This document shows positions 39,801 through 64,000 of a stretch of DNA of 64,000 bases, piece by piece. Below the pieces are notes generated by a model. That model was not told the origin of the DNA, did no database searches, and saw nothing but the letters and a program-made list of their open reading frames with translations. The DNA comes from Haliotis rubra (Eukaryota), in the NCBI RefSeq assembly GCF_003918875.1, contig NW_025767371.1:310001-374000 (forward strand). Reading direction: 5' to 3'. A program made the translations under genes and the position numbers. Positions within the stretch are counted from its first letter, which is position 1. Each line of letters begins with the position of its first letter.

Positions 39801-42800
39801 CCTGTCAATGAGATGTGGTACCTGCCAAAGAGATGTTACCTGTCAAAGAGATGTGTTACCTGTTAATGAGATCTGTTACCTGTCAATGAGATGTGTTACC
39901 TGTCAATGAGATGTGTTACCTGTCAAAGAGATGTTACCTGTGAAGGAGATGTGTTACCTATCAATGAGATGTGTTAGCTGTCAAAGAGATGTGTTACCTG
40001 TCAAAGAGATGTGTTACCTGTCAATGAGATGTGTTACCTGCCAAGGAGATATGTTACCTGTCAATTGAGATGTGTTACCTGTCAATGTGGTATGTTACCT
40101 GTCAATGAGATGTGTTACCTGTCAAAGAGATGTGTTACCTGTCAATGAGATGTGTTACCTGTCAATGAGATGTGTTACCTGCCAATGAGATGTGTTGCCT
40201 GTCAATGAGATGTGTTACCTGTCAAAGAGATATGTTACCTGTCAAGAGACATGTTACCTGTCAAGGATATGTGTTACCTGTCAATGAGATGTGTTACCTG
40301 TCAAAGAGATGTGTTACCTGTCAATGAGATGTGTTACCTGCCAATGAGATGTGTTACATGTCAAAGACATATGTTACCTGTCAAAGAGAAGTGTTACCTG
40401 TCAATGAGATGTGTTACCTGCCAATGAGATGTGTTACCTGTCAATGAGATGTGTTACCTGTCAATGAGATGTGTTACCTGCCAAAGAGATGTTACCTGTC
40501 AAAGAGATGTGTTACTTGTCAATGAGATCTGTTACCTGTCAATGAGATGTGTTACCTGTCAGTGAGATGTGTTACCTGTCAACGGGATGTGTTACCTGCC
40601 AATGAGATGTGTTACCTGTCAAAGAGATGTAACCTGTCAATGAGATGTGTTACCTATCAATGAGATGTGTTACCAGTCAATGAGATGTGTTACCTGTCAA
40701 AGAGATGTGTTACCTGCCAAAGATTTGTTACCTGTCAAGGAGATGTAGAATCCCATATCGCAGAATGCCTTCAAGTCTGTCGTTGTCTGCCTGTCTCCGC
40801 TAATACAAACTGGCGGTAGTTTGTCCTTGAACTCTGAGAGGATCCTCTGTGTTGTCTCCAGCTTACTCGTGTCACACAACACCAGGGGTATGTCCATGTC
40901 ACATGCCAGTTTCACCTGTCAAAATGTCACACACTACCTCAGCTGTGACACATTACATCACCTGTCACACAACACTTCATCACCTGTCACACAACACTGC
41001 ATCACCTGTCACACAACACTACATCACCTGTCACACAACACCTGTCACACACAACTACATCACTTGCCACACAACACTACACAACACTTCATGATCTGTC
41101 ACACAACACTACATCACACAACACTTCACCACCTGTCACACAACACTACATCACCTGTCACACAACACTACATCACACAACACTTCAAGACCTGTCACAA
41201 AACACTTCATGACCTGTCACACAACACTACATCACACAACACTAGATCACCTGTCACACAACACTACATCACCTGTCACACAACACCTGTCACACACAAC
41301 TACATCACTTGCCACACAACACTTCATGATCTGTCACACAACACTACATCACACAACACTTCACCACCTGTCACACAACACTACATCACCTGTCACACAA
41401 CACTACATCACACAACACTTCATGACCTGTCACAAAACACTTCATCACCTGTCACAGAACACTACATCACACAACACTACATCAACTGTCACACAACACT
41501 TCACCACCTGTTACACAACACTTCATCACCTGTCACACAACACTACATCACCTGTCACACAACACTACATCAAATGTCACAGAACACTACATCACCTGTC
41601 ACACAACACTGCATCATCTGTCACACAACACTACATCACCTGTCACACAACACTTCATCACCTGTCACAGAACACTACATCACCTGTCACAGAACACTAC
41701 ATCACCTGTGACACAACACCACAGCAACTGTCACACAACACTACATCACCTGTCACACAACACTACATCAACTGTCACACAACACTACATCATCTGTCAC
41801 ACAACACTACATCAACTGTCACACAACACTATATCACCTGTCACACAACACTACATCACCTGTCACAAAACACTACATCACACAACACTACACCAACTGT
41901 CACACAACACTACATCACCTGTCACACAACACTACATCACCTGTCACAACACTACATCACCTGTCACACAACACCTGTCACACACAACTACATCACTTGC
42001 CACACAACACTTCATGATGTCACACAACACTACATCACACAACACTTCACCATCTATCACAAAACACTACATCACCTGTCACACAACACTTCATCACACA
42101 ACACTACATCACCTGTCACACAACACTACATCACACAACATTTCACCATCTGTCACACAACACTACATCACCTGTCACACAACACTACACTACATGTCAC
42201 ACAGCTCACACTATTCTCACCACATAACCTAACTGTCTTACCTGGGCTCTGAACATCTCCCTCCGAGAGTCTGTATAATTCCTCTCCAGCCCGATCTCAC
42301 CCAGGGCCACACACTGAGGGTGAGATAGGAGGTCACGCAGTTGCTGTACAGTTGTCTCCCCTTTCCATGAACTTTCTTGAGTGGGGTGGATGCCTTGTAA
42401 GCATTTACAAACATATCATGAGAGTTATGATCACAGAATCAACCGTCCCTCCAAATCAACCACTTTTTCTCAAACTAAAACTGGCTGTAGATTTCTTTCA
42501 GTCTGATTTTCTAAGATGTATATATAGTTTTGTTTAAATTTCCCATGTATACACAAACATCAAAGTAACTGAAAAAAATAATTATGATAACTTTGATCAG
42601 TTTTCTAAAATGAATGAAACACACATTCATCTTCCTTCAACACAATAGAATATATCGAAAGTTCTACACAAAATCTGGCATGACTTTCAATTGAAGTTTT
42701 CAATTTGTTTACACTGACAGCTTCTTCTGTCTGGCAATTTGAGAGATGTTTATTCAGCCCAACATGCAGTTTGAGTATATTGTAGAGCATGGTCAAACGT

Positions 42801-45800
42801 TGAAAAATAATTTCCATAAACCAGCTGTTATCCTGAGAATAGCCTACGAAGTATCTACAGTTTTGTCATTTCAAATTGATCATTGATTTATGTTCTGATT
42901 GAATTGCAATATTGTCATCAGAATATTCCCGATTCCTGTTCAGGGCCTAAGGTGAATGCAGTGTGGCCCTTGACAACACCCACCAGCGGTGAAGTAGATG
43001 ATCCCAGGGAAGCTGTCGGCCAGGGCCTTAGCCTTCATGGCCTGTCTCACCGTCAGTGTCTTCACCACAACCTTCTCTACACCTGGAACACAACGTCCAT
43101 CTTGTCAAAACATGAGATTACGATAGAGTTGACAACAAAGTACTATCTTCGATGAAGCAGTCAAGAAAGTCACTCTTTGATGGAGGAGACAAGATAGTGA
43201 CTCTTTGATGGAGGAGACAAGAAAGTGACTCTTTGATGGAGGAGACAAGAAAGTGACTCTTTGATGGAGGAGACAAGAAAGTGACTCTTTGATGGGGGGA
43301 GATAAGAAATTGACTCTCTTTGATGGAGAGACAAGAAAGTGACTCTTTGATGGAGGAGACAAGAAAGTGACTCTTTGATGGAGGAGACAAGAAAGTCACT
43401 CTTTGATGGAGGAGACAAGATAGTGACTCTTTGATGGAGGAGACAAGAAAGTGACTCTTTGATGGAGGAGACAAGAAAGTGACTCTTTGATGGAGGAGAC
43501 AAGAAAGTGACTCTTTGATGGGGGAGATAAGAAAGTGACTCTCTTTGATGGAGAGACAAGAAAGTGACTATTTTTGATGGAGGAGACAAGAAAGTGACTG
43601 TCTTTGATGGAGGAGATAAGAAAGTGACTCTCTTTGATAGAGAGACAAGAAAGTGACTATCTTTGATTGAGAAGATAAGAAAGCGACTGTCTTTGATTGA
43701 GTGACAACAAAGTGACTCTTTGATGGAGGAGACAAGAAAGTGACTGTCTTTGATGGAGGAGACAAGAAAGTTACTCTTTAATGGAGGAGATAAAAAGTGA
43801 CATAAATGGACTTCACACTTTGTAACCATGTGGGGAATCAAACCTGGGTCTTCGGCGTGACGAGCAAACGCTTTAACCACTAGGCAACCCCACCGCCCCC
43901 ATTCAGAAAGAGAGTTGATGAAGAGCATTAAGATAACAAAGCCGTCTCAAAAGAAAATAGAAGTTACAGTAAGAATTGTAAACATTGTGCAGTTCAAACA
44001 GTATAAGGATTTGTATTTTCCGACTGAACCACCTAACATCTGATATAGAAACTGATATACTGGGCGCTGTGGGAGAGCTTGCTAAGGCGCCAGGCTAGTG
44101 ATCCAGCGAGGTTGAGGTGTCGGGATCCAGCCCATCCATGACCGGGTGTAAAAACCTTAGAGTCAACTTTGTGTGCAGACTCTTTCAGTGTTGTCACAAC
44201 CCCTAGTGTACAGTACACAACCCTGGGCACTTAAAAGAACCCACGAATCCGTTGGTATTTGACCAGATGGTGGCCACATGAATATGTGCAAACACCTAAT
44301 TGTGGGTACAGCAACATGCAGTGAACTTGGACAAAGTACTGTGACTATGTGTCCCAGTCCACCCAGCTGTGAATGGGTACCTCGTTAGGATGAGAAAGCC
44401 ACAATAACTCGGTGCGCCTAGTGGCTGCAAGAGTTGTATACTCCCCAGGGAGTTGAGTTTGATAATCCGATGTGCCGTTGAGATTGACATCCAATGATCG
44501 AGGGAAAAAATACCAGCGCCTTGAGCATGCACTAGTGCGTGGATATGTGCGCTATATAAATATCCTGTAATAATAAATATAATAATAATATATACAGAGG
44601 TCATGACAAGAGTATGTTTCAACATGGATTATGCTATATAAATATCCTGTAATAATAAATATAATAATAATATATACAGAGGTCATGACAAGAGTATGTT
44701 TCAAGATGGATTATTTACTGTATGAAGAATAAGCACACTGTATTCAGTGGTACTAGATCTATAACATGAATAAACATTGTGCTTAGGGAGACTGTATTAG
44801 GAATATACATTGTATTTAGTGAGCCCTACATATTATTATGTGATTATTGGGGCTTACAATTGTACCTGGATAAATCTTAAATCCAAAGTGTCAGTATGTT
44901 TTTACTGTGGTGTCAATGATATTTAACATACATACCAGATAGGAAAGCTCGTTTGATGACTTCGTTGACATCCTTCTTTGCAGTGAAACCAGGATCAACA
45001 AGATAAGCTCCTGCATCTATCATGTGATACATTAACTCTGTTCTCTCTTTTGACATTGAAACCACAGACTCAACACATTCGGAAAGACAAAACACTGTCC
45101 CTTCCTCATTTTTTCTCCATTTTGATGTGACACGTTTCTGCATATTCTCGGGCTTTTTGACTGAAAGCTCCTTTCCTTTGAGTAACCTGAAGAAAATAGA
45201 TACCGTACAACAAGTTGAGTATGTGAGTATGTCATGTGAGTGAATGGGCGAGAGTGTCTGTTCATTGTCTTGACCGTGTCTTAAAGCCCCATTCATGTGC
45301 ATTTTCCTGTTTCTGGGTATTCATGTTTTGGTAATTGGATGGAGAAAAAGCTAATTGTTTTTGGTTCTGCAAAAAGTTATCTGAATATGTTGGCAGGTAA
45401 ACAGTTCCACTTGTCTTCAGTGTAGTAATTGAACAATTATTCACATTTTTTGCGGTAAATACAAACAAGGAAAATACTTTTATTCAGATATTTCCTCCCA
45501 CCTGACATTATGTTGCTGACTTTGTAAACTATTTAAAACAAATTTAAAACAGAAAGTTGGACGTGCTTCAACATTCCCTTACATGCCATCCATCTGTAAC
45601 ACCTCTTTTGTGAGGGTCTTGGGCACCACCACCTCTGCACACTCCTTGGACTTGCCATGCTTGTCCACATGTATGTACACCTGGATGCTGGGATCTAGGC
45701 ACATGTACTCCTTGAGGTACAGGGGGCTCACAGACTTGTCAACATTCACTGAAGTCAGTAGAAATAGTCCAATACAGTCATTGTACAAGGATTAATCAGT

Positions 45801-46881
45801 AATACAGAATTATGTTATAATTACTTTGATTTTCTGTTTAAGGCAGCCTCTGACTCTGTGATGGGATTTTTTCCAAGTCATCTGACACAGGGCGATGTCC
45901 ACCTGACTAATAAGGTCAATTTGGTCAACAGGCTGAGACCATAACAATGTCATGTGGTATAACTCTGACCAACTTCAGATGTACTGATGCAAATGGTTTG
46001 ATTGTCATTCTGGAAGTTGTCAATAATGACCCAAAAACTTTATGGATTACAACTTCTTGCTTATTGCATTATGTTTAAGAGTGACATTTCAGTGTAGTTA
46101 CTAAAACTGTTATCACTCTTAGAGGTGAGGTGAGGTGAGGTGAGGTGAGGTGAGGTGAGGAGATATGGGGTTTAACGTCGTGCTTGAGAATATTTCACTC
46201 ATATGACGACGTGCATGTGTGTGTATGTGTTTGTGCGGCTGCATGTACTAGCCCAGACTGAAAAGCTGGTTTTATAGTGCTAGCCCACTGAGATACCATG
46301 CCGCAGTGAAGCATGAATACCCCACTCAGACACTCCAAGCCGACCAGTCCTTGTTGTACCCATTAATGCCGAGCGCCAGGCAGGGACCAACAAGTACCAT
46401 ATTTTAACGTCTTTTGGTATGACACGGCCGGGGATCGAACCCGTGACCTTCCGCTCTCCGGGCGGACGCTTTAACCACTACACCACGGAGGCGGTCTTTG
46501 AGCAATAAACAAGAAGTTGGCATTCATAAAGTTGTACGCTTCATTATACTGATACAGTTTACACACTACCGGCCTTTATACATAGTACAGATGTCAGGTA
46601 CCTGATAAATAGCTGGTATACAATGGAGAATGAACTTTCAAATCTTATTGTATATTTTAATTTGTATCGTAAATGGAAATTTTACACAAATGCCTTCTTT
46701 TAAGAGATGTCATGCTGACATCACAGGAGAATGTATACAGATAGACATGTTGATTAAATCTGAATGACTCCAAAACAACTACTTAACTGCAATAACTTAC
46801 GGACATAAAACTTCTGGTAAGTGCTGAAAATGTCCTCTAAGCTGTTGAGGATCTGGGCCCGTTGGTTATGGTGTCCGTCAT
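36854..46881 (-). CDS. TatD-like protein, copy 1 (RRM-like + degenerate TatD + C-terminal TM); exon 1 frame disrupted as assembled
   Basis: Exons 46881-46801, 45748-45583, 45186-44936, 43082-42984, 42393-42242, 40915-40732, 37410-36854. TatD motifs MIDAGAYL, YFTAGIHP, VALGEIGL, GFYISLTG, RLLLASEAP, RNEP, NAYTFY. An extra 5 bp in exon 1 gives TAG at 46839-46837. Confidence 0.85.
38030..40745. repeat. 20-bp minisatellite (acctgtcaatgagatgtgtt)n, ~135 copies; unit = exon 6 end plus donor
   Basis: Minus-strand unit ACATCTCATTGACAG|GTAAC versus real junction ACATCTCCTTGACAG|GTAAC. Contains a 722-bp higher-order duplication. Confidence 0.95.
40915..42205. repeat. 22-bp minisatellite (acctgtcacacaacactacatc)n filling intron 5 of TatD-like copy 1
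   Basis: Minus-strand unit GATGTAGTGTTGTGTGACAG|GT resembles the adjacent acceptor GTGTGACATTTTGACAG|GTG. Confidence 0.95.
43160..43800. repeat. 28-bp minisatellite (aagaaagtgactctttgatggaggagac)n, ~22 copies
   Basis: Directly visible; intron 3 of copy 1 only. Confidence 0.95.
43800..43900 (-). mobile_element. tRNA-derived SINE family B, 5' part
   Basis: Reverse complement of the gggcggtggggttgcctagtggttaaagcg head. Confidence 0.75.
44062..44590 (+). mobile_element. SINE family D (central ccacccagctgtgaatgggtacc segment, gcgctatataaat tail)
   Basis: Degenerate tRNA-like head, core-like segment, LINE-like 3' tail and (AAT)n. The tail plus flank is locally duplicated with an 82-bp period (44551/44633). 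Confidence 0.6.
46122..46496 (-). mobile_element. Full-length tRNA-derived SINE family C
   Basis: Minus head gaccgcctccgtggtgtagtggttaaagcg...gggttcgatccc (A and B boxes); (CTCAC)n tail. Confidence 0.85.
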
Positions 46882-51924: not shown

Positions 51925-52984
51925 TAGAACCTTAAAATATTACCGTTGTTTCCTTCAGGAATACTGGTCACAATATCTATTCCATCATATGTACTGAAAT
52001 AAAGATTGATTGACGTTTTGTGTGTGTTGTTGGAAGCCTTTCAGTAGGACGGAGGTATGGAACTAATTGAGTCTGGACCAGACAATCCAGTGATTGACAT
52101 GAGCAACAAACCACGCCCTTGGTGTCCCATGTAGTCGCCTCTCAACATCAGCACAGATGTCTGGGGGCCAGTTTTAACCCGGAATATCCACATGTGCAGG
52201 AAGGTACCAATGTGAATATAGAAGGCAGCCAAGTTTCCCATACAGTTACCAGACACAGCCAATCCCACAAGCAAATTGTTGTGATCTAGATTATCTTTGA
52301 TATGAAAACACATGGTAACTATCTTGATAGAGGAGAACTTGAGAAATGTATATTGCTTCTATTTAGAACTTCATAATAATTGAAATACAGTTAATGGTTT
52401 TTATTCATTGGTACTTGGAAACAACAAGGTATAATAGTTCATAACATAAGCCAAGAATGTGCCCAGGTAGATTCAACGAAGTGACTCCATCTGTTCCAGT
52501 GAAGTGGGGATTGTCGCTCACCGTTCCAGCCACACAAGACCCTCCAGAACCACCATTCTGAGGGAATACCATAGTCTTCCCAGACAGCAGGATGCCAACA
52601 CATTTCAGTTTCACACGAGATTGGTTGGTTGGTTTGTTGTTGAACACCTCACTCCAGCGATATGGCAGCAGTCTGTAAATAATCGAGTGTGGTCAACAGC
52701 ATGAGCATCCCTCTATGCAAATGGGAACCGATGACATGTGTCAAGTCGGCAAGCCTGACCACCCGATCCCGTTAGTTGACTCTTACGACAAGCATGGGTT
52801 ACTGAAGATCAGTGCTAACCCACATCTTCACAGGTCTACACACCGGAGGCTACTTCATAAATTATATCCCTGCGAGCATTTACACATTTTATTTACAAAA
52901 CCAAACACACAAGGGCAATCAACTCTTATCATATAAACCATTCCTGAAAATTGTTCCTGAGGTATTTTCATTTGCATGAACCAT

Positions 52985-53627: not shown

Positions 53628-56600
53628 TCATTCAATGACAGAATCCAGTTTCCAAACATACTGGAATGTTAACAAGATGGTGACCATGAGAATACCAAGG
53701 ATGAATGTAAGTCCTGGGAATACATACTTCCTCCTCTTGTCTGGCTGGAGGTCAACAACCTCAGAGGTCACTTCCTGCACCTCACTACATGTTCCTTCAG
53801 AACTTTCTACCAACTTCCTGTCAGACTTTTCAGTAAATCTATAGAATGTATACGTATTTTGTCTGACCATGTCCGCGAGCTGTTGTGGAGTCCGCTGAAC
53901 TCTACCCGATGCCAACTCCAAGATGCTGTGTAAACTAAGTGGCTCGTTCCGCTTACAACAGTACTTCATTGTCAACTTTGAGCTGTCCTCCGACAAGTTA
54001 CAACCATCAACTTTGAACACTGCTTGATGGTGAGATCTTGATGAACCAGCGTAGTTGCCGATGAAGTCGGGGTACTTTCCAGGAGCCTCGCTGGCCAGGA
54101 TTAGCCTCATTGTCTCTATGTCACGTGATACACTGCTCAGCCAATCTCTTGGACATCCCTTATATGGGCTAGTCCAGGCATGTCCTTGAAAGAAAAGACA
54201 TTAGATCATCTGAATTAAATACTGAAGAAAAAGCAGGATTATATTTTCCTCTATGGACATAAAGTCACAAAGTGACAACTGTATGACAAGGGCTAAAACG
54301 GTAGAAGTAGGTTTGATTCCTTATTTTTGTTGTAACTTGAGTAGGTGAACAATTTCTTGAAGTGTACTATGTATCATGCAGAAACATGAAGTATACATCC
54401 TGTACAATCTTCACTTTGTTTCAATTATTCTTACATTCATACTCTATTCAATGCCATTTGCACTGGCGACTTGAACCCCCTTCCCTAACTTTATGTGTAG
54501 GCAATAGTTTGAAGCTAGTAAAGCCCTCTTCACAGCTAGAAGGTCATAACTATGTACACGTTTTCAAAAACCTATAAAGCTGTATTGACTAGGCTTTTGT
54601 ATGTCTGTAGTAAACTTCCACTCACTCACTCAAAGAGAAAGAAACACACCTTGGGGCTACTGAGAATGGGACAATAAGATGTATTACCAGTGTATCAAAT
54701 AAGGCCCGTCCAACCGCCCAAGACAGGCTAGATTTCTAACGGACGGTCTAAATTTACAGCTAGCCAGCCCAATGGTCTGGTACAAATTTTAGATGTTCCA
54801 TACACCTGAGTAAATTCACCATATTTGGTCTGGTTAAATCCACTTGGGCAGGTAACATTTTGAACTTACCAGCCTTGATGTCTGGCTTATTTCATACACT
54901 GGTATTACCTGTCAAAGAGATGTGCTACCTGTCAAAAAGATCTGTTACCTGCCAAGGAGATGTGTTACCTGTCAAAGAGGTGTGTTACCTGTCAAAGAGA
55001 TGTGTTACCTGCCAAAGAGATGTTACCTATCAATGAGATGTGTTACCTTTCAAAGAGATGTGTTACCTGCCAAGGAGATGTGTTACCTGTCAAAAAGAGG
55101 TGTTACCTGCCAAGTAGATGTGTTACCTGCTAAGTAGATGTGTTAACTGTCAAAGAGTGTGTTACCTGCCAAGGAGATGAGTTACCTTTCTAGGATCCAG
55201 AGATGTGCTACTTGTCAAAACGGTGTGTTACCTGTCAAAGAGGTGTGTTACCTGCCAAGGAGATGTGTTACATGTCAAAGAGGTGTGTTACCTGCAAAGA
55301 AGATGTGTTACCTGTCAAAGAGATGTGTTACCTTTCTAGGATCCAGAGATGTGTTACTTGTCAAAACGGTGTGTTACCTGTCAAAGAGATGTGTTATCTG
55401 CCAAGGGGACGTGTTACCTGCAAAGGAGATGTGTTACCTGTCAAACAGGTGTGTTACCTACTAAGGAGATGTGTTATCTTTCTAGGATCCAGAGATGTGT
55501 TACCTCTCAAAGAGATGTGTTACCTGCCAAGGAGATGTTCTACCTTTTACCTGTCAAGGAGATGTAGAATCCCATGTCATAGAATGCCTTCAAGTCTGTC
55601 GTTGTCAGCCTGTCTCCGCTAATACAAACTGGCGGTAGTTTGTCCTTGAATTCTGAGAGGATCCTCTGTGTTGTCTCCAGCTTACTCGTGTCACACAACA
55701 CCAGGGGTATGTCCATGTCACATGCCTGTTTCACCTGTCAAAATGTCACACAACACTACATCACCTGTCACACAACACTACATCAACTGTCACACAGTGC
55801 ATCACCTGTCACACAACACTACATCACCTGTCACACAGCTCTATATCACCTGTCACACAACACTACATCACCTGTCACACAACACTACATCACATGTCAC
55901 ACAGCTCTATATCACCTGTCACACAACACTAAATCACCTGTCATACAACATTATATCACCTGTCACACAACACTACATCACCTGTCACACAGCTCTATAT
56001 CACCTCTCACACAACACTACATCACATGTCACACAGCACTATATCACCTCTCACAGAACACTACATCAACTGTCACACAACACTACATCACCTGTCACAC
56101 AGCACTAAATCACCTCTCACAGAACACTACATCAACTGTCACACAACACTACATCACCTGTCACACAGCTCTATATCACCTCTCACACAACACTACATCA
56201 CATGTCACACAGCACTATATCACCTCTCACAGAACACTACATCAACTGTCACACAACACTACATCACCTGTCACACAGCACTAAATCACCTCTCACAGAA
56301 CACTACATCAACTGTCACACAACACTACATCATCTGTCACACAATACTACATCAACTGTCACACAACACTACATCAACTGTCACACAACACTACATCACC
56401 TGTCACACAACATTATATCACCTGTCACACAACACTACATCACCTGTCATACAACATTATATCACCTGTCACACAACACTACATCACCTGTCATACAACA
56501 CTACATCACCTGTCACACAACACTACATCACATGTCACACAAGACTACATCACATGTCACACAGCTCTATATCACCTCTCACACAACACTACATCACCTG

Positions 56601-59600
56601 TCACACAACACTGCATCACCTATCGCAACACTACATCACCTGTCACACAACACTGCATCACCTATCACAACACTACACTGCATCACCTCACACAACACTG
56701 CATCACCTATTACAACACTACATCACCTGTCACACAACATTATATCACCTGTCACACAACACTGCATCACTTATCACAACACTACATCACCTGTCACACA
56801 ACACTACATCACCTGTCATACACCACTACATCACCTGTCGCACAACACTACATCACATGTCACACAGTACTATATCACCTGTCACACAACACTACATCAC
56901 CTGTCACACAACACTACATCACCTGTCACACAACACTACATCACCTATCACAACACTACATCACCTGTCACACAACACTACATCACCTGTCACAGAACAC
57001 TACATCAACTGTCACACAACACTACATCACCTGTCACACAACACTACATCAGCTATCACAACACTACATCACCTGTCATACAACATTATATCACCTGTCA
57101 CACAACACTACATCACCTGTCACACAGTACTACATCACCTGTCACACAACACTACATCACATGTCACATAGCTCTATATCACCTCTCACACAACACTACA
57201 TCACCTGTCACACAACACTACATCACCTGTCATACAACATTATATCACCTGTCACACAACACTACATCACCTGTCACACAACACTGCATCACCTGACATA
57301 CAACACTACATCACCTGTCACACAACACTACATCACCTGTCATACAATGCATCAACTGTCACACAACACTACATCACCTGTCACACAACACTACATCACC
57401 TGTCACACAGCACACACTATTCTCACCACATAACCTAACTGTCTCACCTGGGCTCTGAACATCTCCCTCTGAGTGTCTGTTTCAGCCTTTCCCAGCCCGA
57501 TCTCACCCAGGGCCACACACTGGGGGTGGGATAGGAGGTCACACAGTTGCTGTAGAGTTCTCTCCCCTTTCCATGAACTTTCTTTGGTGGGGTGGATGCC
57601 TTGTAAGCATTTACAAACATATCATGAGAATTCCAATCACATGTGCAACCATCCCTCCAAATCAACCCCCATTTATCAAACTAATACAGGCTAAGATATA
57701 TATAATTTGGTTTAAATTTTCTCATGTATACACAATCATCAAAGTAACTGCTCAACTGAAAAAAATAATAATTATGATAACTTTGATCAGTTTTCTAAAA
57801 TGAAGGAAACACATATTCATCTTCCTTCAACACATCTGTAAATATCTAAAGTTCTCCACAAAACCTGGCATGCCTTTCATTTGAAATTTTCAATTTGTTT
57901 ACACTCACAGCTTCTTCTGTCTGGCAATTTGAGAGATGTTTATTCAGCCCAACATGCAGTTTGAGTATATTGTAGAGCATGGTCAAACATTGAAAAATAA
58001 TTTCCATAAACCAGCTGTTATCCTGAGAAAAGCCTAAGAAGTATCTACAGTTTTGTCATTTCAAATTGATCATTGATTCATGTTCTGATTGAATTGCAAT
58101 ATTGTCATCAGAATATTCCCGATTCCTGTTCAGGGCCTAAGGTGAATGTAGTGTGGCCCTTGACAACACCCACCAGCGGTGAAGTAGATGATCCCAGGGA
58201 AGCTGTCGGCCAGGGCCTTAGCCTTCATGGCCTGTCTCACCGTCAGTGTCTTCACCACAACCTTCTCTACACCTGGAACACAACGCCCATCTTGTCAAAA
58301 CTTATTTGTTTGATCAGTATTCTAAAAGTCTATCAAAGCACTCTTATTAGAGTGTGGTTACTACTTATCCTACTTATTTACTGGCTTCATCACCAGTTCC
58401 ATTTGTAGTTCCTGGTCCCCAACTGGTCTCTTCAATTATGTACCACTTGTTTCAATTACATGCTGCTTATGTTAATCTGCTGTTTTGTCATAACATACCA
58501 TGTTATCTGATCTTTGCCCCAAAATACTATGTAATATTCTTCTCAACATTTGCTTGTAGTTACGTATAGCTTGATAACGGCCTAAGAATCTATATCAAAA
58601 TGTCGCTATATGCCATAAAAAAGAAGTTGTCATCAATAAAGTTGTATGCTTCATTTTGAACAGATACCTTTCTTTGATGGAGTAGACAAATAATACAGCT
58701 ACAATCAATCACAAATGTTTATTGGTTGTTTGATGGTTTGTCAATGAAGTCAGCCAGCCTGACCACCCGATCCTGTTAGTCACATCTTACGACAAGCATG
58801 GGTTACTGCATGAAGACCAATTCTAACCTGGATCTTCACGGGTCAAAACTTTACTGTATTAAGAATAAGCAAACTGTTTTCAGGGAGAGTGTCATAGGAA
58901 TAAACATTGTGCTCAGAGAGATTGTCATAGGAATAAACATTGTGCTCAGGGAGATTGTCATAGGAATAAACATTGTGTTCAGGGAGATTGTCATAGGAAT
59001 AAACATTGTGTTCAGGGAGATTGTCATAGGAATAAACATTGTGCTCAGAGAGATTGTCATAGGAGATTGTCATAGGAATAAACATTGTGCTCAGAGAGAT
59101 TGTCATAGGAATAAACATTGTGTTCAGGGAGATAGTCACAGGAATAAACATTGTGCTCAGAGAGGTTTTCTTAGGAATAAACATTGTGTTCAGGGAGACT
59201 GTCATAGGAATCAACATTGTGCTCAGGGAGATTGTTATAGGAATAAACATTGTGTTCAGGGAGATTGTTATAGGAATAAACATTGTGTTCAGGGAGACTG
59301 TCATAGGAACAAACATTGTGTTCAGGGAGATTGTCATAGGAATAAACATTGTGTTCAGGGAGACTGTTATAGGAATGAACATTCTGTTAAGGGAGATTGT
59401 TATAGGAATGAACATTGTGTTCAGGGAGATTGTCATTGGAATAAACATTGTGTTCAGGGAGACTATTATAGGAATGAACATTCTGTTAAGGTAGATTGTT
59501 ATAGAAATGAACATTGTGTTCAGGGAGATTGTCATAGGAATAAACATTGTGTTCAGGGAGACTGTCAAAAGAATGAGAATTGTGCTCAGGGAGACTCTAT

Positions 59601-62268
59601 TAGAAATATACATAGTATTTAGTGAGCCATACATAAAATAGGTTTTGTCCATTTTGAACTCTGGGAAAGTCAGCACAATAACTAGATAAATCAAAAGTAT
59701 CAACATATTTCTGTTATGGAATCCATGATATTTTTATCATACATACCAGATAGGAAAGCTCGTTTGATGACTTCGTTGACATCCTTCTCTGCAGTGAAAC
59801 CAGGATCAACAAGATAAGCTCCTGCATCTATCATGTGATACATAAACTCTGTTCTCTCTTTTGACATTGAAACCACAGACTCAACACATTCGGAAAGACA
59901 AAACACTGTCCCTTCCTCATTCTTTCTCCATTTTGATGTGACAAGTTTCTGCATATTCTCTGGTTGTTTGACTGAAAGCTCCTTTCCTTTGAGTAACCTG
60001 AAGAAAATAGATACCGTACAACAGGTTGAATTCATGTGAGTAAATGGGCGAAAGTTTGTGTGCGTTATCTTAAATGACCATGTCTTAAAACCCCATTCCT
60101 GTCCTTTTATCTTGTTTCTGGGTACTGTTCTGAAGGGAGAAAAAAATGAAGGAAAATACTTTCCAGAATTGGCTTTCATTCCTCAAAAAATTATCTAAAT
60201 ATCTTGCCCGTGCAGGTAAACAGTTTCTCTTGTGCTTGTCCAATTCAACAGTTATTCACATTATTCGTTAGGGCTAGCAATCAATATAGATTAAAGAGAT
60301 CGATAATCGTTAACAAAATATCAATCGATTATTGATAAATATCGGAGGCATAACTTTGAGCAAAAATGCCCAAACTGTCTGAACGAAATGAATATATTTC
60401 ACATCACGTAAGTTGTGGCATGTTTTTGCTTTGGTTATTAACAAGGCAGCATCCGAAATATAATTCAGAAGCAGACCATGAATAAAGTCCTGAATTTGTA
60501 TATTGTGAGAGAAAACTAAAACTTTTAAAACTTAAAAATTAATGTACGATATTATCGATAGCACAATTTTCATATTGATAATCATTAACAACTTTTAAGA
60601 CGACATTTCCGATTATCAATTATATTCATCCTCCCTATTATTTGTGGCATATAATAAAAAGGAAAATATGTTTTTCAGACTTTTCCTCCCACCTGACATT
60701 ATCTTAATGTCAGTACACTTTGTGAATTCATTTTTTTTTAAAGTTGGAGTTGCTTCAAGATCCCCTTACCTGCCATCCATCCGTAACACCTCTTTTGTGA
60801 GGGTCTTGGGCACCACCACCTCTGCACATTCCTTGGACTTGCCACGCTTGTCCACATGTATATACACCTGGATGCTGGGATCTAGGCACATGTACTCCTT
60901 GAGGTAAAGGGGGCTCACAGACTTGTCAACATTCACTGAAGTCAGTAGAAATAGTCCAATACAGTCATTGTACAAGTGGAACGGTGGGGTAGCCTAGTGG
61001 TTAAATCATTCATTCATCACGCTGAAGACCTGGGTTCGATTCCCCACATGGGTACAATGTGTGAAGCCCATTTCTGGTGTCCCCCGCCGTGATATCGCTG
61101 GAATATTGCTAACAGCGATGCAAAACTAAACTCACTTACTCACTCATTGTACAAGTATTAATCTCTAATGTCAAATTACATTATAATTACATTGATTCTG
61201 TTTAATTTTTAGTCTGTAATTGGATTCGAAACATGGGCCTTGTAATCTGACAAGGGGCGGTGTCCACCTGACTGATGAGGTCAACCCAGTCAACAGGCTG
61301 AGACCATAACGATGTCATGTGGTATAACTAACTCTATGACCTAGTTTTAGACACTACCCTTTATACATAGAACATGTGAGAGGTAGGTGAGTGGGTGGTT
61401 AAGTCAGTGGGTGAGTGGGTGGTACCTGATAAATACCTGGATTACAAAGGAGAACAATCTTTCTAATCTTATTGTATAGTTTTATATCGTAAATGTAAAA
61501 TTTTACATGAATGACTTCCTTGTAATGTATGTTATATTTGGGATTACACTTTCTTAATAAAGTACAGATTATAGTACTTTTGGGGTTGAGTCCTTTTCAG
61601 GATTCGAATCCACATCCTCAGAGTCAGGCACCTAATCGCCAGCACACAAAGTCAGACGCCTAGACCGCTCAGCCACCGCGGCTTCCACAAAAATGGAAGT
61701 CGGACAACTGGTAGTCTGCACTGCGGACTTCGTGTACCCCTCTGATAAGTGTTATTTGGCACGGCTCCCAAGGGATTCGAACCCACACCCTCAGAGTCAG
61801 GCACCTCAGCCAGACTCTCAGGGTGTGGGTTCGAATCCTGGATGGGACTCAACCAAAAAAGTACTAGAATCTGTACTTTACTAAGAAAGTGTAATCCCAA
61901 ATATAACATACGTTACATTTGACCACTTTCTAAAATGGCATTGTGTATTTCAATGACTTCCTTGCCATAACAGATGCATGGGTGAATTATGTAGTCATCT
62001 CAGAAGAATGTATACAGATAGACAGGTAGCCGAGAACTAGCCGGTCCTATACAGTCAAGATATGACCCTGTATACATGACCCGGCATGTCTTGACTGTAC
62101 TCTGAGTATAGGACGGTGTCGTGGCTCTCGGCTAATAGTCATGTTGACTAAATCTGTAAGATTACCAAAGACATTGCATAATTTCGATAACTTACTGATA
62201 TAAAACTTCTGTTGAGTGCTGAAAATATCCTCTGTTGAGGATCTCGACCCATTACTTGTGTCCGTCAT
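53628..62268 (-). CDS. TatD-like protein, copy 2 (RRM-like + degenerate TatD + C-terminal TM), intact 493 aa
   Basis: Exons 62268-62196, 60935-60770, 59997-59747, 58272-58174, 57599-57448, 55734-55551, 54184-53628 (1482 nt, open throughout, GT-AG). Exons 2-7 have the same lengths as in copy 1. Confidence 0.88.
54688..54901. mobile_element. Short TIR MITE
   Basis: TIR cagtgtat(c/g)aaataag / cttatttcatacactg flanked by the direct repeat gtattac. Confidence 0.75.
54902..55565. repeat. 20-bp donor-derived minisatellite, copy-2 version (~30 units)
   Basis: gttacctg(t/c)caa(a/g)gagatgt units, with interspersed ttctaggatccagag variants. Confidence 0.92.
55735..57412. repeat. 22-bp acceptor-like minisatellite, copy-2 version
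   Basis: (acctgtcacacaacactacatc)n with agctctat and agcactaa variants. Confidence 0.95.
58860..59625. repeat. 33-bp minisatellite (cagggagattgtcataggaataaacattgtgtt)n, ~22 copies
   Basis: Directly visible; intron 3 of copy 2. Confidence 0.95.
60269..60637. mobile_element. hAT-type MITE
   Basis: TAGGG...CCCTA termini, 8-bp TSD ttattcgt/ttatttgt; empty site in the paralog near 45445. Confidence 0.75.
60978..61143 (+). mobile_element. Full-length tRNA-derived SINE family B with TSD
   Basis: A box TAGCCTAGTGG, B box GGTTCGATTCC, 13-bp TSD tcattgtacaagt; empty site in the paralog at ~45778. Confidence 0.9.
61523..61951. mobile_element. Fold-back SINE-like insertion with tRNA-like pieces and 13-bp TSD
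   Basis: TSD aatgacttccttg (61510, 61952); ~105-bp inverted arms 61522-61626 / 61813-61917. Confidence 0.7.
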
Positions 62269-64000
62269 GACGAGGTGAAACAGTCAGTCTCGTTTTAACC
62301 TTATCTGTCAGTTGTGAAACATCAACATGATAAACCACACTTCCTCATTCTGTCTCCAGCCGACCCGACAGTTTTAAAACTGTGATAATACGCATACAAA
62401 ATCCAGATAAACAAATCCTTTAGTTACAGATAATTCATCTCTTCAAAATTGACAATTTTGTACAGGTTTCATAACATGTCACATCATTAAACAATCCAAG
62501 GTGGAGACACGTGTTCAGATTGGGAGTATTTGTTGTGAGAGAAGACAAGGGTAGATAACTCTAATTAACCCCCACACATACGACGCTTCTTTGATCCCTC
62601 CGTATTAACTGTTTGGGGCTTTTAATAGTCAATTTCATTTCGTCTAAATTGATTGACATTGTTATGAATGTGAAATTCATACTCTTTGATCATTTACATA
62701 TTGACATATCATGATGACAAGAATTCGGTTCAGGAGCGATGACCACGCCCCCTCGTGTGGACCCGGAAGCAATCGACGTATTGCACCATGTATTCGAAAC
62801 CCGAATACATATGTAGTCGTCGGAGTTGGAGACCCACGATAGCATGTAAGGATTGAAGACGGTAACAGTTGTTTCAGGAAATGATGGATAACGAAGAAGT
62901 TCCACCCTTATCACCTGTAAAGCAAGTCGTGCGTAAAACTCTACTAATTGGTAAGTTAGTCACTATAGCAACTAGGGGAAGTAGAAGTAATTCACAGGTA
63001 ATAATATTGAAATTATTGCATGCTTAAATAGTTTTAAATGTCCAAGAGTTGATGCTGATGTTTTGGAAATTCCTGATTATTATATCCTGTAATATTTGTA
63101 CAACGTGTCAAGACATGTTGTTGTTAGCACGAATATTGTTCGTTAACCTTTATGGAACACCTTCACGCGCATGATCAATGCTGTTTACCGATTTTAAGAA
63201 CATTAAGGAAATAATAAAGAATTTAGTTTAGTCTGCCCTAAAGACATCCTCGCGACATAGTCAATGAGTGAGATTTTGTGCTTCTAGGAGCAAAATACCT
63301 GCCCTGTCCGAATGGGACGCCAGTGAGGGGCTGCCCATTTTTTACACACTTCCTGGTGGAATTCTAAATTAACATGACCCATTGTAATTCTAGTTAACAG
63401 CTAGTTAAATGTTACCTCACTATAAATAGCTAGGATTATTAAAGCCTACCTCATACAGTTATTATTGAATTTGGCTTATGTTTACACTGGAGAAGTTTGT
63501 TGCCCTAATTCAATATTATCATGTTACTACCATATTGGCATTAGCATCACATATTGGTATTATTAAATCTTGCTTACTTGAGACAGTAAGTTTTACCTGG
63601 AACTCAAAGAACATACCAGAGAGGGGCACACTGATTCTTGGAAACTTTAATCACCTGATATTTCACAGTGAAGTCAAGGTTAGAATTGCTCCCTACTACC
63701 TATGCTATTCAGACAGCTGCCAACTGATGACTTGGTTGTGAGTGTGTCATCATGACCTGACAGGAATCGTTGCTCATCCTGTCAACCACTGGTTTATCCG
63801 GTTCATGGCTTGTGGCTGACATCATGCTGGAATATTGGTGATTGTGTGGTGAATTAGAAGATGAATAAACCTCTAATGTACTTCACATTAACACAAGTCA
63901 TATGGACTTATATTTCATGTTGAGACCCATGAAGATCATTAGATCATTAGATTGGTATTCAACAACCTATGCTTGCTGAAAGAGGCGATTAACTGGATAG

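What the first reader, a model, noticed from the sequence alone, without database searches (positions are those of the whole stretch)
53628..62268. Unusual protein architecture: RRM-like domain + catalytically eroded TatD barrel + tail-anchor TM, in two tandem copies
Seen: the spliced 493-aa product begins with an RRM-like module (RNP2-like KFYIMNV, helix SPLYLKEYM, VYIHVDKRGKSKECAEVVV in place of V.I..D..GKSKGFAFVEF, then MDGRLLKGKELSVK). A full TatD fold follows, then an acidic linker, a basic patch (DKRRKY), a hydrophobic helix (VFPGLTFILGILMVTILLTF) and a short tail. Established: TatD nucleases are normally soluble and use Glu (GExGLD), two His (xxHxR, xxHCF) and the ETD motif. Here only the GEIGL Glu survives; the His positions read PLVLCDT and VCISGD, and ETDAP reads ASEAP, in both copies. 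Inference: a membrane-tethered (ER or mitochondrial outer membrane) pseudo-nuclease that binds nucleic acid. It might act as a sensor or scaffold, or by analogy with tail-anchored piRNA-processing factors. I do not know of a described RRM-TatD-TM family.
Basis: partly seen in the sequence, partly recalled or inferred. Interest (0 to 1): 0.85.

Follow-up and report, generated by a model that had tools for sequence, protein, structure and literature searches.

The report
Abalone membrane-anchored RRM–TatD gene cluster
Abalone carry a small cluster of expressed, conserved genes that join a degenerate RNA-recognition domain, a TatD-nuclease barrel with a rebuilt or destroyed metal site, and a C-terminal membrane anchor; this combination has not been described, and its function is unknown.

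Summary
On the minus strand, seven GT-AG exons (53628-62268) splice into a 493-aa ORF, and a tandem paralog lies at 36854-46881. The window is Haliotis rubra, or a genome very close to it.

- **TatD barrel:** certain (Pfam E 6e-30 on the ortholog; 147 bits for the window's own protein; Foldseek TM 0.86 to E. coli TatD).
- **N-terminal module:** a true but degenerate RRM. Pfam misses it. Profile-profile comparison with genuine abalone RRMs gives 94.8% probability (score 42.6; column shuffles 10±2). All 10 PDB profile hits are RRMs, and AlphaFold gives a β-α-β-β-α-β order.
- **Membrane anchor:** one strongly hydrophobic segment, 9-12 residues from the C-terminus, with no signal peptide.
- **Transcripts:** RNA contigs join exons 1-2-3, 3-4 and 3-4-5 exactly as modelled.

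Three amendments:
- Copy B has a frameshift in exon 1.
- A third, older paralog (about 30% identical over the TatD exons, same architecture and intron positions) sits head-to-head with copy A.
- The family occurs in four Haliotis species and is under purifying selection (dN/dS 0.40 and 0.17).

"Pseudo-nuclease" is only partly supported. Copies A and B keep the one residue shown to be essential in human TATDN1; the third paralog has lost it. An earlier scan note flagged the third paralog. I class this as a new variant of a known kind, of moderate interest.

The parts
62196..62268 (-). Copy A exon 1: start codon at 62268 and the first 24 codons, ending inside RRM strand beta-1 (KFYI|MNV, phase 1)
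   Evidence: RNA contigs X5 record 2 and X7 record 15 join 62196 to 60935.
60770..60935 (-). Copy A exon 2: core of the RRM-like domain (alpha-1, beta-2, beta-3 with the degenerate RNP1 KECAEVVV, alpha-2)
   Evidence: hhalign against genuine RRMs. RNA contig X5 record 2 joins it to exon 3.
59747..59997 (-). Copy A exon 3: RRM beta-4 (LLKGKELSV), a 40-aa linker and the first TatD strand (MIDAGAYL). The RRM-TatD junction is contiguous in genomic DNA within this exon.
   Evidence: RNA contigs cover 59745-59997.
58174..58272 (-). Copy A exon 4 (TatD)
   Evidence: RNA contigs X5 record 1 and X8 record 21 join exon 3 to exon 4.
57448..57599 (-). Copy A exon 5 (TatD: GIHP and GEIGL motifs retained)
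   Evidence: Pfam TatD_DNase E 6e-6 on this exon alone. RNA contig X8 record 21 joins exons 3, 4 and 5.
55551..55734 (-). Copy A exon 6 (TatD: PLVLCDT and VCISGD, where Cys and Ser replace the two His metal ligands)
53628..54184 (-). Copy A exon 7: TatD C-terminal third (LILASEAP, fast-evolving insert, KRNEP), acidic linker, DKRRKY, membrane segment, 12-residue tail and stop codon
53661..53723 (-). Copy A membrane-segment coding stretch (residues 463-483, VFPGLTFILGILMVTILLTFQ)
   Evidence: Best 19-aa Kyte-Doolittle window 2.31, the only stretch of the protein at or above 1.6, with 12 residues after it. AlphaFold helix 466-489 in the ortholog. dN/dS 0.27 against H. cracherodii.
46801..46881 (-). 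Copy B exon 1, disrupted: insertions of +3 and +5 nt relative to copy A put the ATG out of frame and create an in-frame TAG at about 46837-46839
36854..45748 (-). Copy B exons 2-7 (45748-45583, 45186-44936, 43082-42984, 42393-42242, 40915-40732, 37410-36854): an open 470-codon frame with the same motifs and membrane segment as copy A
   Evidence: Identical to NCBI H. rubra protein P0004 from Met56 onward.
62881..62950 (+). Exon 1 of the third paralog (copy C), head-to-head with copy A; the two start codons are 613 bp apart. The remaining six exons lie beyond the window at window-equivalent 64501-71096.
   Evidence: Ortholog P0192 confirms the N-terminus.
52408..52674 (-). Alternative terminal exon used by NCBI isoform X2 (P0005). 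It is reached from an internal GTATGT donor just before the membrane-segment codons and would give an isoform without that segment. This is a prediction only.

Best explanation
This is a Haliotis-restricted cluster of three paralogous genes. Copy C sits head-to-head with copy A, copy B follows A in tandem, and a Dmrt gene lies further downstream.

Each gene encodes a tail-anchored protein whose cytosolic part has two domains. The first is a degenerate RRM. The second is a class-I (TATDN1/E. coli TatD-type) TatD TIM barrel with a remodelled metal centre.
- In A and B the two His ligands of metal B are replaced by Cys and Ser, the GxN Asn by Tyr, Glu201 by Ala and Asp203 by Glu.
- In C the bridging Glu and the GxHP His are lost as well.

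Shown here: the gene models, transcription and splicing of exons 1-5 of copy A, the three domains, conservation of architecture and intron positions across about 30%-identical paralogs, and purifying selection on the RRM, barrel and anchor with near-neutral linkers.

Inferred: a single C-terminal membrane segment holds the protein on an organelle surface. The hydrophobic segment and the uncharged or acidic tail of the A type favour the ER. The barrel and RRM would face the cytosol and act mainly through binding (nucleic-acid 3' ends or a protein partner) rather than efficient hydrolysis. Copy C is a dead enzyme. Copies A and B are either dead or weak, altered-metal nucleases.
For: Gene model and length.

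Transcripts: contigs from three of four runs of one study join 62196|60935, 60770|59997, 59747|58272 and 58174|57599.

TatD barrel:
- Pfam E 6e-30 over 252 of 253 profile positions on ortholog P0001.
- 147, 152 and 102 bits for window copies A, B and C against a profile built without abalone sequences.
- Foldseek: 1xwy/4p5u TM 0.86-0.87, human TATDN1 TM 0.75.
- AlphaFold pLDDT about 75-98 across most of the barrel, falling below 50 in the 343-386 insert.

Class I / TATDN1 origin: the nearest non-abalone relatives are fly TATDN1 (CG3308) clusters.

RRM:
- hhalign against 17 genuine RRM exons of the same genome gives probability 94.8%, E 5e-8, score 42.6 over 66 columns in register. Column shuffles give 10.1±2.2.
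- A type alone scores 25.1 and C type alone 25.0.
- A PDB profile search returns 10 of 10 hits as RRMs, best E 0.021.
- AlphaFold places beta 19-25, alpha 33-39, beta 47-52, beta 58-67, alpha 68-75 and beta 88-90.
- The language-model neighbours are RRM clusters.

Anchor: a single 19-aa window with Kyte-Doolittle 2.3-2.7, followed by 9-12 residues, and no hydrophobic N-terminus. In the C type, the anchor and its flanking residues match the H. rufescens ortholog at 26 of 28 positions, while the linker differs by about 160 aa.

Selection, H. rubra against H. cracherodii (dS about 0.49): A type 0.40 overall (RRM 0.33, barrel core 0.34, anchor 0.27, linker 0.88, insert 1.16); C type 0.17.

Synteny is conserved in H. 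asinina and H. cracherodii.
Against: - Pfam RRM_1 gives no hit on any member, and the domain-only AlphaFold model failed (pLDDT 31). The RRM call therefore rests on profile-profile and topology evidence.
- In A and B both RNP1 aromatic positions are lost, so RNA binding is doubtful.
- TATDN1 mutagenesis (PMC10085689) shows that single changes of the His and Asp ligands are tolerated and only Glu112 is essential. A and B retain that Glu, so 'non-catalytic' is not established.
- NCBI predicts an isoform without the membrane segment.
- Membrane insertion and localisation rest on hydrophobicity alone.
- The A-versus-B dN/dS of 0.59 is weak.
Confidence: 0.6

Rival explanations
1. Copies A and B are still active, membrane-tethered 3'-5' exonucleases or AP endonucleases that use a re-wired metal site (Glu, Cys, Glu). 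The RRM would serve as a substrate-recruiting module. This would make them functional analogues of membrane-anchored trimming nucleases rather than pseudoenzymes.
For: - The bridging Glu (GEIGL) and the GxHP His are retained in every A-type sequence from four species.
- In human TATDN1 only E112A strongly reduced both activities. H149A and H174A cost about 2-fold in AP-endonuclease activity, while D222A and E220A had no significant effect (PMC10085689).
- Cys and Glu can ligate metals, and the Cys is conserved even in the 30%-identical paralog C.
- The barrel core is under purifying selection, dN/dS 0.34.
Against: - Five active-site positions are changed at once, including both ligands of metal B and the Asn that contacts metal A.
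- Paralog C keeps the same architecture under stronger constraint (dN/dS 0.17) although it has lost the essential Glu and the His. Selection on this family therefore does not require catalysis.
Confidence: 0.3
2. The combined architecture is an artefact. Under this reading an ordinary TATDN1-like gene has been wrongly merged with a neighbouring RRM exon and a chance hydrophobic ORF tail, or the genes are decaying pseudogenes.
For: - Copy B has a frameshifted first exon.
- NCBI models for H. rubra are truncated or alternative (P0004 starts at Met56; P0005 lacks the RRM and the membrane segment).
- Pfam sees only the TatD domain.
Against: - RNA contigs physically join exons 1-2-3 and 3-4-5.
- RRM strand beta-4 and the first TatD strand lie in one exon.
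- The membrane segment lies in the same exon and frame as the TatD C-terminus.
- Full-length ORFs with all three modules are conserved in H. asinina (two genes), H. cracherodii and H. rufescens, and in the deep paralog C.
- dN/dS is below 1 on each module.
Confidence: 0.03
3. The N-terminal module is not an RRM relative but an unrelated small alpha/beta domain that matches RRM consensus strings by chance.
For: - No Pfam RRM_1 hit at E up to 10.
- Single-sequence PDB hits have E of 0.1-1.
- The RNP1 aromatics are missing in A and B.
- The domain-only AlphaFold model has pLDDT 31.
Against: - hhalign score 42.6 against shuffles of 10±2, aligned over the full RRM length. The A-type and C-type subfamilies each reach a score of 25 on their own.
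- 10 of 10 PDB profile hits are RRMs aligned from RNP2 to RNP1 in register.
- The full-length AlphaFold model gives the beta-alpha-beta-beta-alpha-beta order at pLDDT 50-74.
Confidence: 0.07

Closest known systems
TATDN1 / E. coli TatD (class I TatD nucleases; PDB 8EFG, 2XIO, 1XWY, 4P5U)
   Same: - Same TIM-barrel fold (Foldseek TM 0.75-0.87) and a full-length Pfam TatD_DNase match.
- Class-I first strand with Gly rather than the HxH motif.
- The GxHP His, the bridging Glu and the RNEP motif are retained in copies A and B.
- A TATDN1-like insertion follows the ETD strand.
- The nearest sequence relatives outside abalone are fly TATDN1.
   Different: - TATDN1 and TatD are soluble single-domain enzymes.
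- Here the barrel is preceded by an RRM and followed by an acidic linker and a C-terminal membrane anchor.
- Both His ligands of metal B, the GxN Asn, Glu220 and Asp222 (TATDN1 numbering) are replaced.
- In paralog C the Glu112 and His77 equivalents and RNEP are also gone.
TATDN2 (vertebrate TatD paralog with a long N-terminal extension)
   Same: It is a TatD barrel with an added N-terminal region (PMC10085689).
   Different: TATDN2 is class II (HxH motif). Its extension often carries a nuclear localisation signal rather than an RRM, and it has no membrane anchor. The abalone genes are class-I derived.
PNLDC1 (piRNA trimmer) and Zucchini/MitoPLD: membrane-anchored RNA-processing nucleases (recalled from memory, not tested here)
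   Same: In both cases a nucleic-acid-processing domain would be held on an organelle surface by a single membrane segment and would face the cytosol. TatD enzymes are 3'-5' exonucleases on ssDNA and RNA, as PNLDC1 is on RNA.
   Different: The folds are unrelated (PARN-type DEDD and PLD). Those enzymes are catalytically intact, and nothing here links the abalone genes to piRNA biology. This is a works-like analogy only.
Canonical RRM proteins (Pfam RRM_1; for example hnRNP M, RBM7, ALYREF, Pub1)
   Same: The beta-alpha-beta-beta-alpha-beta order, an RNP2-like first strand with the conserved Asn, the D-x-x-G-K/R-S turn before beta-3, and the L-x-G-x-x-L/I-x-V beta-4.
   Different: The match is below Pfam detection. 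In A and B the RNP1 aromatics are replaced by Cys and Glu. C keeps the RNP1 Tyr but has Leu or Ile at the RNP2 aromatic position.

Membership tests
TatD_DNase (PF01026), class I / TATDN1 clade | Full-length match to the family profile above the curated cut-off, and a TatD TIM-barrel fold | tested here: met
   P0001 scores 104.9 bits against a cut-off of 27, covering profile positions 1-252 of 253. Window copies A, B and C score 147, 152 and 102 bits against a profile built without abalone sequences. Foldseek TM 0.86-0.87 to E. coli TatD.
TatD_DNase (PF01026), class I / TATDN1 clade | Class-I (G/A)xN motif on the first strand; the Asn contacts metal A in TATDN1 | tested here: not met
   Gly is present, but the Asn is Tyr in all A, B and C sequences (IDAGAYL, IDGGMYL). 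The motif's role is taken from PMC10085689.
TatD_DNase (PF01026), class I / TATDN1 clade | Bridging Glu of GExGLD (TATDN1 Glu112), the only residue whose Ala mutant markedly reduced both activities | tested here: met
   GEIGL is retained in copies A and B and in all A-type orthologs. It is not met in paralog C, which reads GPCGYD or GQCGYD.
TatD_DNase (PF01026), class I / TATDN1 clade | The two His ligands of metal B (TATDN1 His149 and His174; E. coli His127 and His152) | tested here: not met
   They are Cys and Ser in A and B (LVLCD, CISGD). In C the first is Cys (VVCET); the second, in AILTKP, is not His either.
TatD_DNase (PF01026), class I / TATDN1 clade | The ETD strand carboxylates (TATDN1 Glu220 and Asp222) | tested here: not met
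   A-S-E in A and B (ASEAP); S-S-Q in C (SSQMP).
TatD_DNase (PF01026), class I / TATDN1 clade | Metal-dependent nuclease activity | not testable with these tools
   This needs a biochemical assay.
RRM (Pfam RRM_1, PF00076) | A match to the curated family profile | tested here: not met
   No RRM_1 hit at E up to 10 on any A-type or C-type N-terminus.
RRM (Pfam RRM_1, PF00076) | Homology detectable by profile-profile comparison, over the full domain and in register | tested here: met
   hhalign probability 94.8%, E 5e-8, score 42.6 over 66 columns; shuffles give 10.1±2.2 with a maximum of 15.8-17.5. All 10 PDB profile hits are RRMs.
RRM (Pfam RRM_1, PF00076) | Beta-alpha-beta-beta-alpha-beta fold | tested here: inconclusive
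   The full-length AlphaFold model gives the expected order at pLDDT 50-74. The domain-only model failed, and no fold search of the isolated domain was possible.
RRM (Pfam RRM_1, PF00076) | RNP1 and RNP2 aromatic residues used for canonical RNA binding | tested here: not met
   A and B keep the RNP2 Tyr but have Cys and Glu at RNP1 positions 3 and 5. C keeps the RNP1 Tyr but has Leu or Ile at RNP2 position 2.
Tail-anchored membrane proteins | A single hydrophobic segment close to the C-terminus, with no signal peptide and no other membrane segment | tested here: met
   In the A type the only stretch with Kyte-Doolittle at or above 1.6 has its best 19-aa window at residues 463-481 of 493, with 9-12 residues after it. 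The N-terminus is hydrophilic. The C type has a weaker segment (1.37) at the extreme C-terminus (conservation).
Tail-anchored membrane proteins | Post-translational membrane insertion with the N-terminal domains in the cytosol, and a defined target organelle | not testable with these tools
   This needs localisation and protease-protection experiments.

The most novel reading that the evidence does not exclude
The cluster encodes a previously unrecognised class of organelle-surface nucleic-acid 'readers'. In this reading a TatD barrel has lost efficient hydrolysis but still clamps single-stranded 3' ends. It works with a degenerate RRM and a tail anchor to capture or hold specific RNAs or DNA at the ER or mitochondrial surface. 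The dead C paralog and the partly intact A and B paralogs would be co-expressed from a shared 0.6-kb bidirectional promoter and act as a pair. The fast-evolving insert and linkers would fit a role in a host-parasite or reproductive conflict.
Probability: 0.15. Interest if true: 0.75.

Novelty: new variant of a known kind. Interest (0 to 1): 0.5.

Why it matters
TatD nucleases are ubiquitous, but their cellular roles remain poorly defined. All described members are soluble enzymes, or carry nuclear-targeting extensions.

This family would be the first case of a TatD barrel recruited as a probably non-catalytic or re-wired module. It is fused to an RRM, anchored to a membrane, and has been kept under selection through a deep duplication.

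The family also offers a natural experiment on which TatD active-site residues are dispensable. The A and B copies keep only the Glu and one His, and the C copy keeps neither. It may also mark an abalone-specific pathway at an organelle surface.

The family is confined to one genus as far as the searches reach, so its general importance is limited unless a function emerges.

Tried and rejected
- **Pfam on the N-terminus:** Pfam scans of the window exon and of four orthologs, at E up to 10, gave no RRM_1 hit.
- **AlphaFold on the N-terminus alone:** a four-sequence alignment gave pLDDT 31, which is unusable. I therefore could not run a fold search on the isolated RRM. Searches with the full-length model returned only TatD and amidohydrolase folds.
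- **First gene-model attempts:** short versions of exons 5 and 7 broke the reading frame. Extending both to upstream AG acceptors restored the missing GIHP and beta-7/alpha-7 segments.
- **First model of paralog C:** it started at an internal ATG, which gave a false 'FFVENIG' RNP2. I corrected it with ortholog P0192. Exon 1 lies at 62881-62950 and the intron position matches that in A and B.
- **Bacterial origin:** considered because E. coli TatD scores higher than human TATDN1 in the PDB search. I rejected it because the nearest database relatives are fly TATDN1 proteins, the genes have seven exons, and both E. coli TatD and TATDN1 are class I.
- **Relatives outside Haliotis:**
  - An exhaustive HMMER search of 1.84 billion representatives with exon 7 found only the abalone cluster and one 172-aa metagenomic fragment (P0002) of unknown organism.
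  - Two word-seeded searches with P0001 and a mixed profile found nothing closer than about 30% identity.
  - A search with the last exon of C found only the H. rufescens C ortholog.
- **Literature:** searches for TatD with RRM and transmembrane, and for TATDN1 with Haliotis, returned nothing relevant.
- **Complex prediction:** none was run, because the report makes no binding claim.

Full report
**What is in the sequence**

The minus strand between 53628 and 62268 holds seven exons: 62268-62196, 60935-60770, 59997-59747, 58272-58174, 57599-57448, 55734-55551 and 54184-53628. My first attempt used short versions of exons 5 and 7 and broke the frame. Extending both to upstream acceptors restored it. 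It also supplied the GIHP segment and the strand and helix that precede the ETD-equivalent motif.

A colinear second copy lies at 36854-46881. Its exons 2-7 align without gaps at 91-99% nucleotide identity, and the proteins are 87% identical. Copy B equals NCBI's H. rubra 'TatD-like' protein P0004 residue for residue. Copy A matches H. rubra LOC124257488 isoform X2 (P0005). The window therefore comes from Haliotis rubra or something very close to it.

**Transcription**

Contigs from three of four small runs of one study are spliced exactly at the modelled junctions:
- One 766-nt contig joins exons 3, 2 and 1, with at least 130 nt of 5' UTR.
- A second contig joins exons 2 and 1.
- A third joins exons 3 and 4.
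- A 448-nt contig joins exons 3, 4 and 5.

The exon-1 piece differs from copy A at only 4 of 204 positions. Copy B's exon 1 is 81% identical with gaps, so these transcripts come from copy A's locus. RRM strand beta-4, the linker and the first TatD strand share exon 3, so the RRM-TatD fusion is also contiguous in the genome. They rest on phase compatibility, homology and the full-length NCBI models in three other species.

**The TatD barrel**

- Ortholog P0001 (H. asinina, 83% identical to copy A) matches Pfam TatD_DNase at E 6e-30 over 252 of 253 profile positions.
- Against a TatD profile I built without any abalone sequence, the window's own spliced proteins score 147 bits (A), 152 bits (B) and 102 bits (C).
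- AlphaFold models most of the barrel at pLDDT about 75-98, with the 343-386 insert below 50.
- Foldseek's best hits are E. coli TatD (TM 0.86-0.87) and human TATDN1 (TM 0.75).
- The family is class I: it has a G-x-N-type first strand rather than HxH. Its nearest relatives outside abalone are fly TATDN1 (CG3308) proteins.

**The active site**

The HMMER alignments give the following, in E. coli numbering:

| Position | Copies A and B |
|---|---|
| Asn7 | Tyr |
| His62 (GxHP) | kept |
| Glu91 | kept |
| His127 | Cys |
| His152 | Ser |
| Glu201 | Ala |
| Asp203 | Glu |

This holds for both window copies and for all A-type orthologs.

In human TATDN1 only E112A markedly reduced both activities. 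H149A and H174A lowered AP-endonuclease activity about 2-fold and left exonuclease activity unaffected. D222A and E220A had no significant effect, and H77A affected only AP-endonuclease activity (PMC10085689). Copies A and B keep precisely the Glu112 and His77 equivalents. Five simultaneous changes probably abolish the metal-B site, but residual or altered activity cannot be excluded.

**The N-terminal module**

Pfam finds no RRM in any member, and a domain-only AlphaFold run failed (pLDDT 31). Three other lines agree that it is an RRM.

1. I collected 17 genuine RRM_1 exons from the same genome and compared their alignment with the N-terminal family alignment using hhalign.
   - The result was probability 94.8%, E 5e-8 and score 42.6 over 66 columns, covering the whole RRM in register.
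   - A reversed query scored 9.3, and column shuffles gave 10.1±2.2 with a maximum of 17.5.
   - The A-type and C-type subfamilies each reached a score of 25 on their own.
2. A PDB search with a family profile returned ten hits at E up to 10. All ten are RRMs (hnRNP M, Pub1, nucleolin, RBM7, ALYREF), aligned from RNP2 to RNP1. The best E was 0.021.
3. The full-length AlphaFold model places beta 19-25, alpha 33-39, beta 47-52, beta 58-67, alpha 68-75 and beta 88-90 at pLDDT 50-74.

The RRM is degenerate. A and B keep the RNP2 Tyr, but RNP1 reads K-E-C-A-E-V-V-V, with Cys and Glu at the two aromatic positions. That argues against canonical RNA binding.

**The C-terminus**

In every A-type protein the best 19-residue hydrophobic window scores Kyte-Doolittle 2.3-2.7, and no stretch elsewhere in the protein reaches 1.6. 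In copy A it covers residues 463-481 of 493. It is preceded by a basic patch and followed by 9-12 residues, and the N-terminus is hydrophilic. AlphaFold makes it a helix. This meets the sequence definition of a tail anchor. Insertion and target organelle remain untested. The high hydrophobicity and the tail's net charge of about -1 favour the ER, by general rules recalled from the tail-anchor literature.

**A third paralog**

Searching the whole assembly with P0001 hit only this cluster plus one weak exon 5.5 kb beyond the window. This is an older paralog, copy C, on the plus strand and head-to-head with copy A.
- Its exon 1 lies inside the window at 62881-62950, 613 bp from copy A's ATG.
- Six further exons lie at window-equivalent 64501-71096.
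- Its 596-aa product is about 30% identical to A over the TatD exons. It has the same order of modules and the same seven-exon structure with matching intron positions and phases. The modules are an RRM with RNP1 reading L-G-Y-A-T-V-T-V, a TatD barrel, a long acidic repeat-bearing linker, and a hydrophobic C-terminus ending two residues before the stop.
- Its barrel is more eroded. It reads GVSP for GxHP, GPCGYD for GExGLD, and VVCET, AILTKP and SSQMP at the other motifs, and RNEP is lost.
- The H. rufescens ortholog P0192 (434 aa, 80% identical) confirms the model. Its C-terminal anchor region matches at 26 of 28 positions, while its linker is about 160 aa shorter.

An earlier scan note (s1-347354) had flagged this gene by title.

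**Distribution and selection**

A-type proteins exist in H. rubra, H. asinina (two tandem genes upstream of a DM-domain gene, as in the window), H. cracherodii and H. rufescens. C-type genes lie head-to-head with the A type in H. cracherodii and are also present in H. rufescens.

Outside Haliotis, an exhaustive HMMER search with exon 7 found only one 172-aa metagenomic fragment of unknown organism.

dN/dS between H. rubra and H. cracherodii, at dS about 0.49:

| Region | dN/dS |
|---|---|
| A type, overall | 0.40 |
| A type, RRM | 0.33 |
| A type, barrel core | 0.34 |
| A type, barrel C-terminus | 0.14 |
| A type, anchor | 0.27 |
| A type, linker | 0.88 |
| A type, post-ETD insert | 1.16 |
| C type, exons 1-4 | 0.17 |

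The three modules are therefore maintained while the connectors drift. The paralog with the deadest active site is the most constrained, so selection on this family does not depend on TatD catalysis.

**Copy B**

Its exon 1 has insertions of +3 and +5 nt relative to copy A. These put the ATG out of frame and create a TAG, and no in-frame ATG lies upstream. In this assembly copy B can encode at best an N-terminally truncated protein lacking the first RRM strand and helix. Its positional ortholog in H. asinina (P0003) is intact. A-versus-B dN/dS is 0.59 overall. There are no differences at all in the last 29 codons and no synonymous differences in the last 68. Paralogs within a species are more alike than positional orthologs are. 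Together these suggest gene conversion between the tandem copies.

**Verdict**

The architecture is real, expressed, conserved within Haliotis and, as far as I can find, undescribed. The genes are, however, already auto-annotated as 'TatD-like'.

The most likely working model is a tail-anchored, cytosol-facing protein that acts through binding rather than efficient hydrolysis. That is near certain for C and roughly even odds for A and B. The ligand, whether RNA, DNA 3' ends or a protein, is unknown.

I rate it a new variant of a known kind and of moderate interest.

Noticed in passing
Own genome, for example L032 (G000:C1336:1038265-1042071), L037 and L040; 45 or more loci on many contigs: Dozens of scattered intronless loci match Pfam TatD_DNase at 50-140 bits. 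Many sit inside uninterrupted 400-800-aa ORFs with intact class-II motifs (HxH, GEVGLDH, HVHCF, LLETDSPY) and share an N-terminal Cys/His-rich region. Several copies carry stop codons. This looks like a multicopy, possibly mobile-element-borne, TatD family unrelated in class to the RRM-TatD genes.
   Followed up: partly
window:55000-57430 and window:58800-59620 (introns 5 and 3 of copy A); also within copy B's introns: Long minisatellite arrays fill these introns and give very long artificial ORFs on both strands. GC skew reaches -0.6 at 56-58 kb. Earlier scan notes (s1-325407, s1-325314) discuss them.
   Followed up: no
window:60980-61200 and window:61600-61960 (intron 1 of copy A): RNA-run contig depth is extremely high here (up to about 176,000 summed word depth), with many rearranged joints and loose ends. 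This indicates abundant dispersed repeats, probably SINE-like. A similar element (translation WGSLVVK..AED.GSIPHM) also lies in an intron of copy C.
   Followed up: no
window:62269-62880: Only 613 bp separate the start codons of copy A (minus strand) and copy C (plus strand). Copy A's 5' UTR reaches at least 62399 in an RNA contig. The two paralogs therefore probably share a compact bidirectional promoter.
   Followed up: partly
window:52408-52674 (-) and the internal donor near 53727: NCBI isoform X2 (P0005) leaves exon 7 at a GTATGT donor immediately before the membrane-segment codons and uses this downstream exon. The result is a different, anchor-less C-terminus. Read support was not checked.
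   Followed up: partly
Copies A and B against H. asinina P0001 and P0003 (L044): The tandem paralogs are more similar within a species (87% and 86%) than the positional orthologs are between species (83% and 78%). The last 68 codons of A and B have no synonymous differences. Together these suggest concerted evolution by gene conversion.
   Followed up: partly
window:27700-29300; L044:23761-26333: A DM-domain (Dmrt) gene lies downstream of the tandem pair in H. asinina (Pfam DM in the called gene). An earlier scan note places a Dmrt DM exon at 27765-29270 of this window, so the neighbourhood appears syntenic.
   Followed up: no
L043 (JGI metagenome 3300059824, 1632-nt contig): A 172-aa ORF (P0002) is 37% identical to the last exon of the A type and shares the eroded LLLASNAP motif, the long insert and KRNEP, but has no clear membrane segment. 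It is probably an exon of a related gene from an unidentified animal in an environmental sample.
   Followed up: partly
window:32620-32772: A run of 153 N (an assembly gap or masked stretch); left untouched.
   Followed up: no
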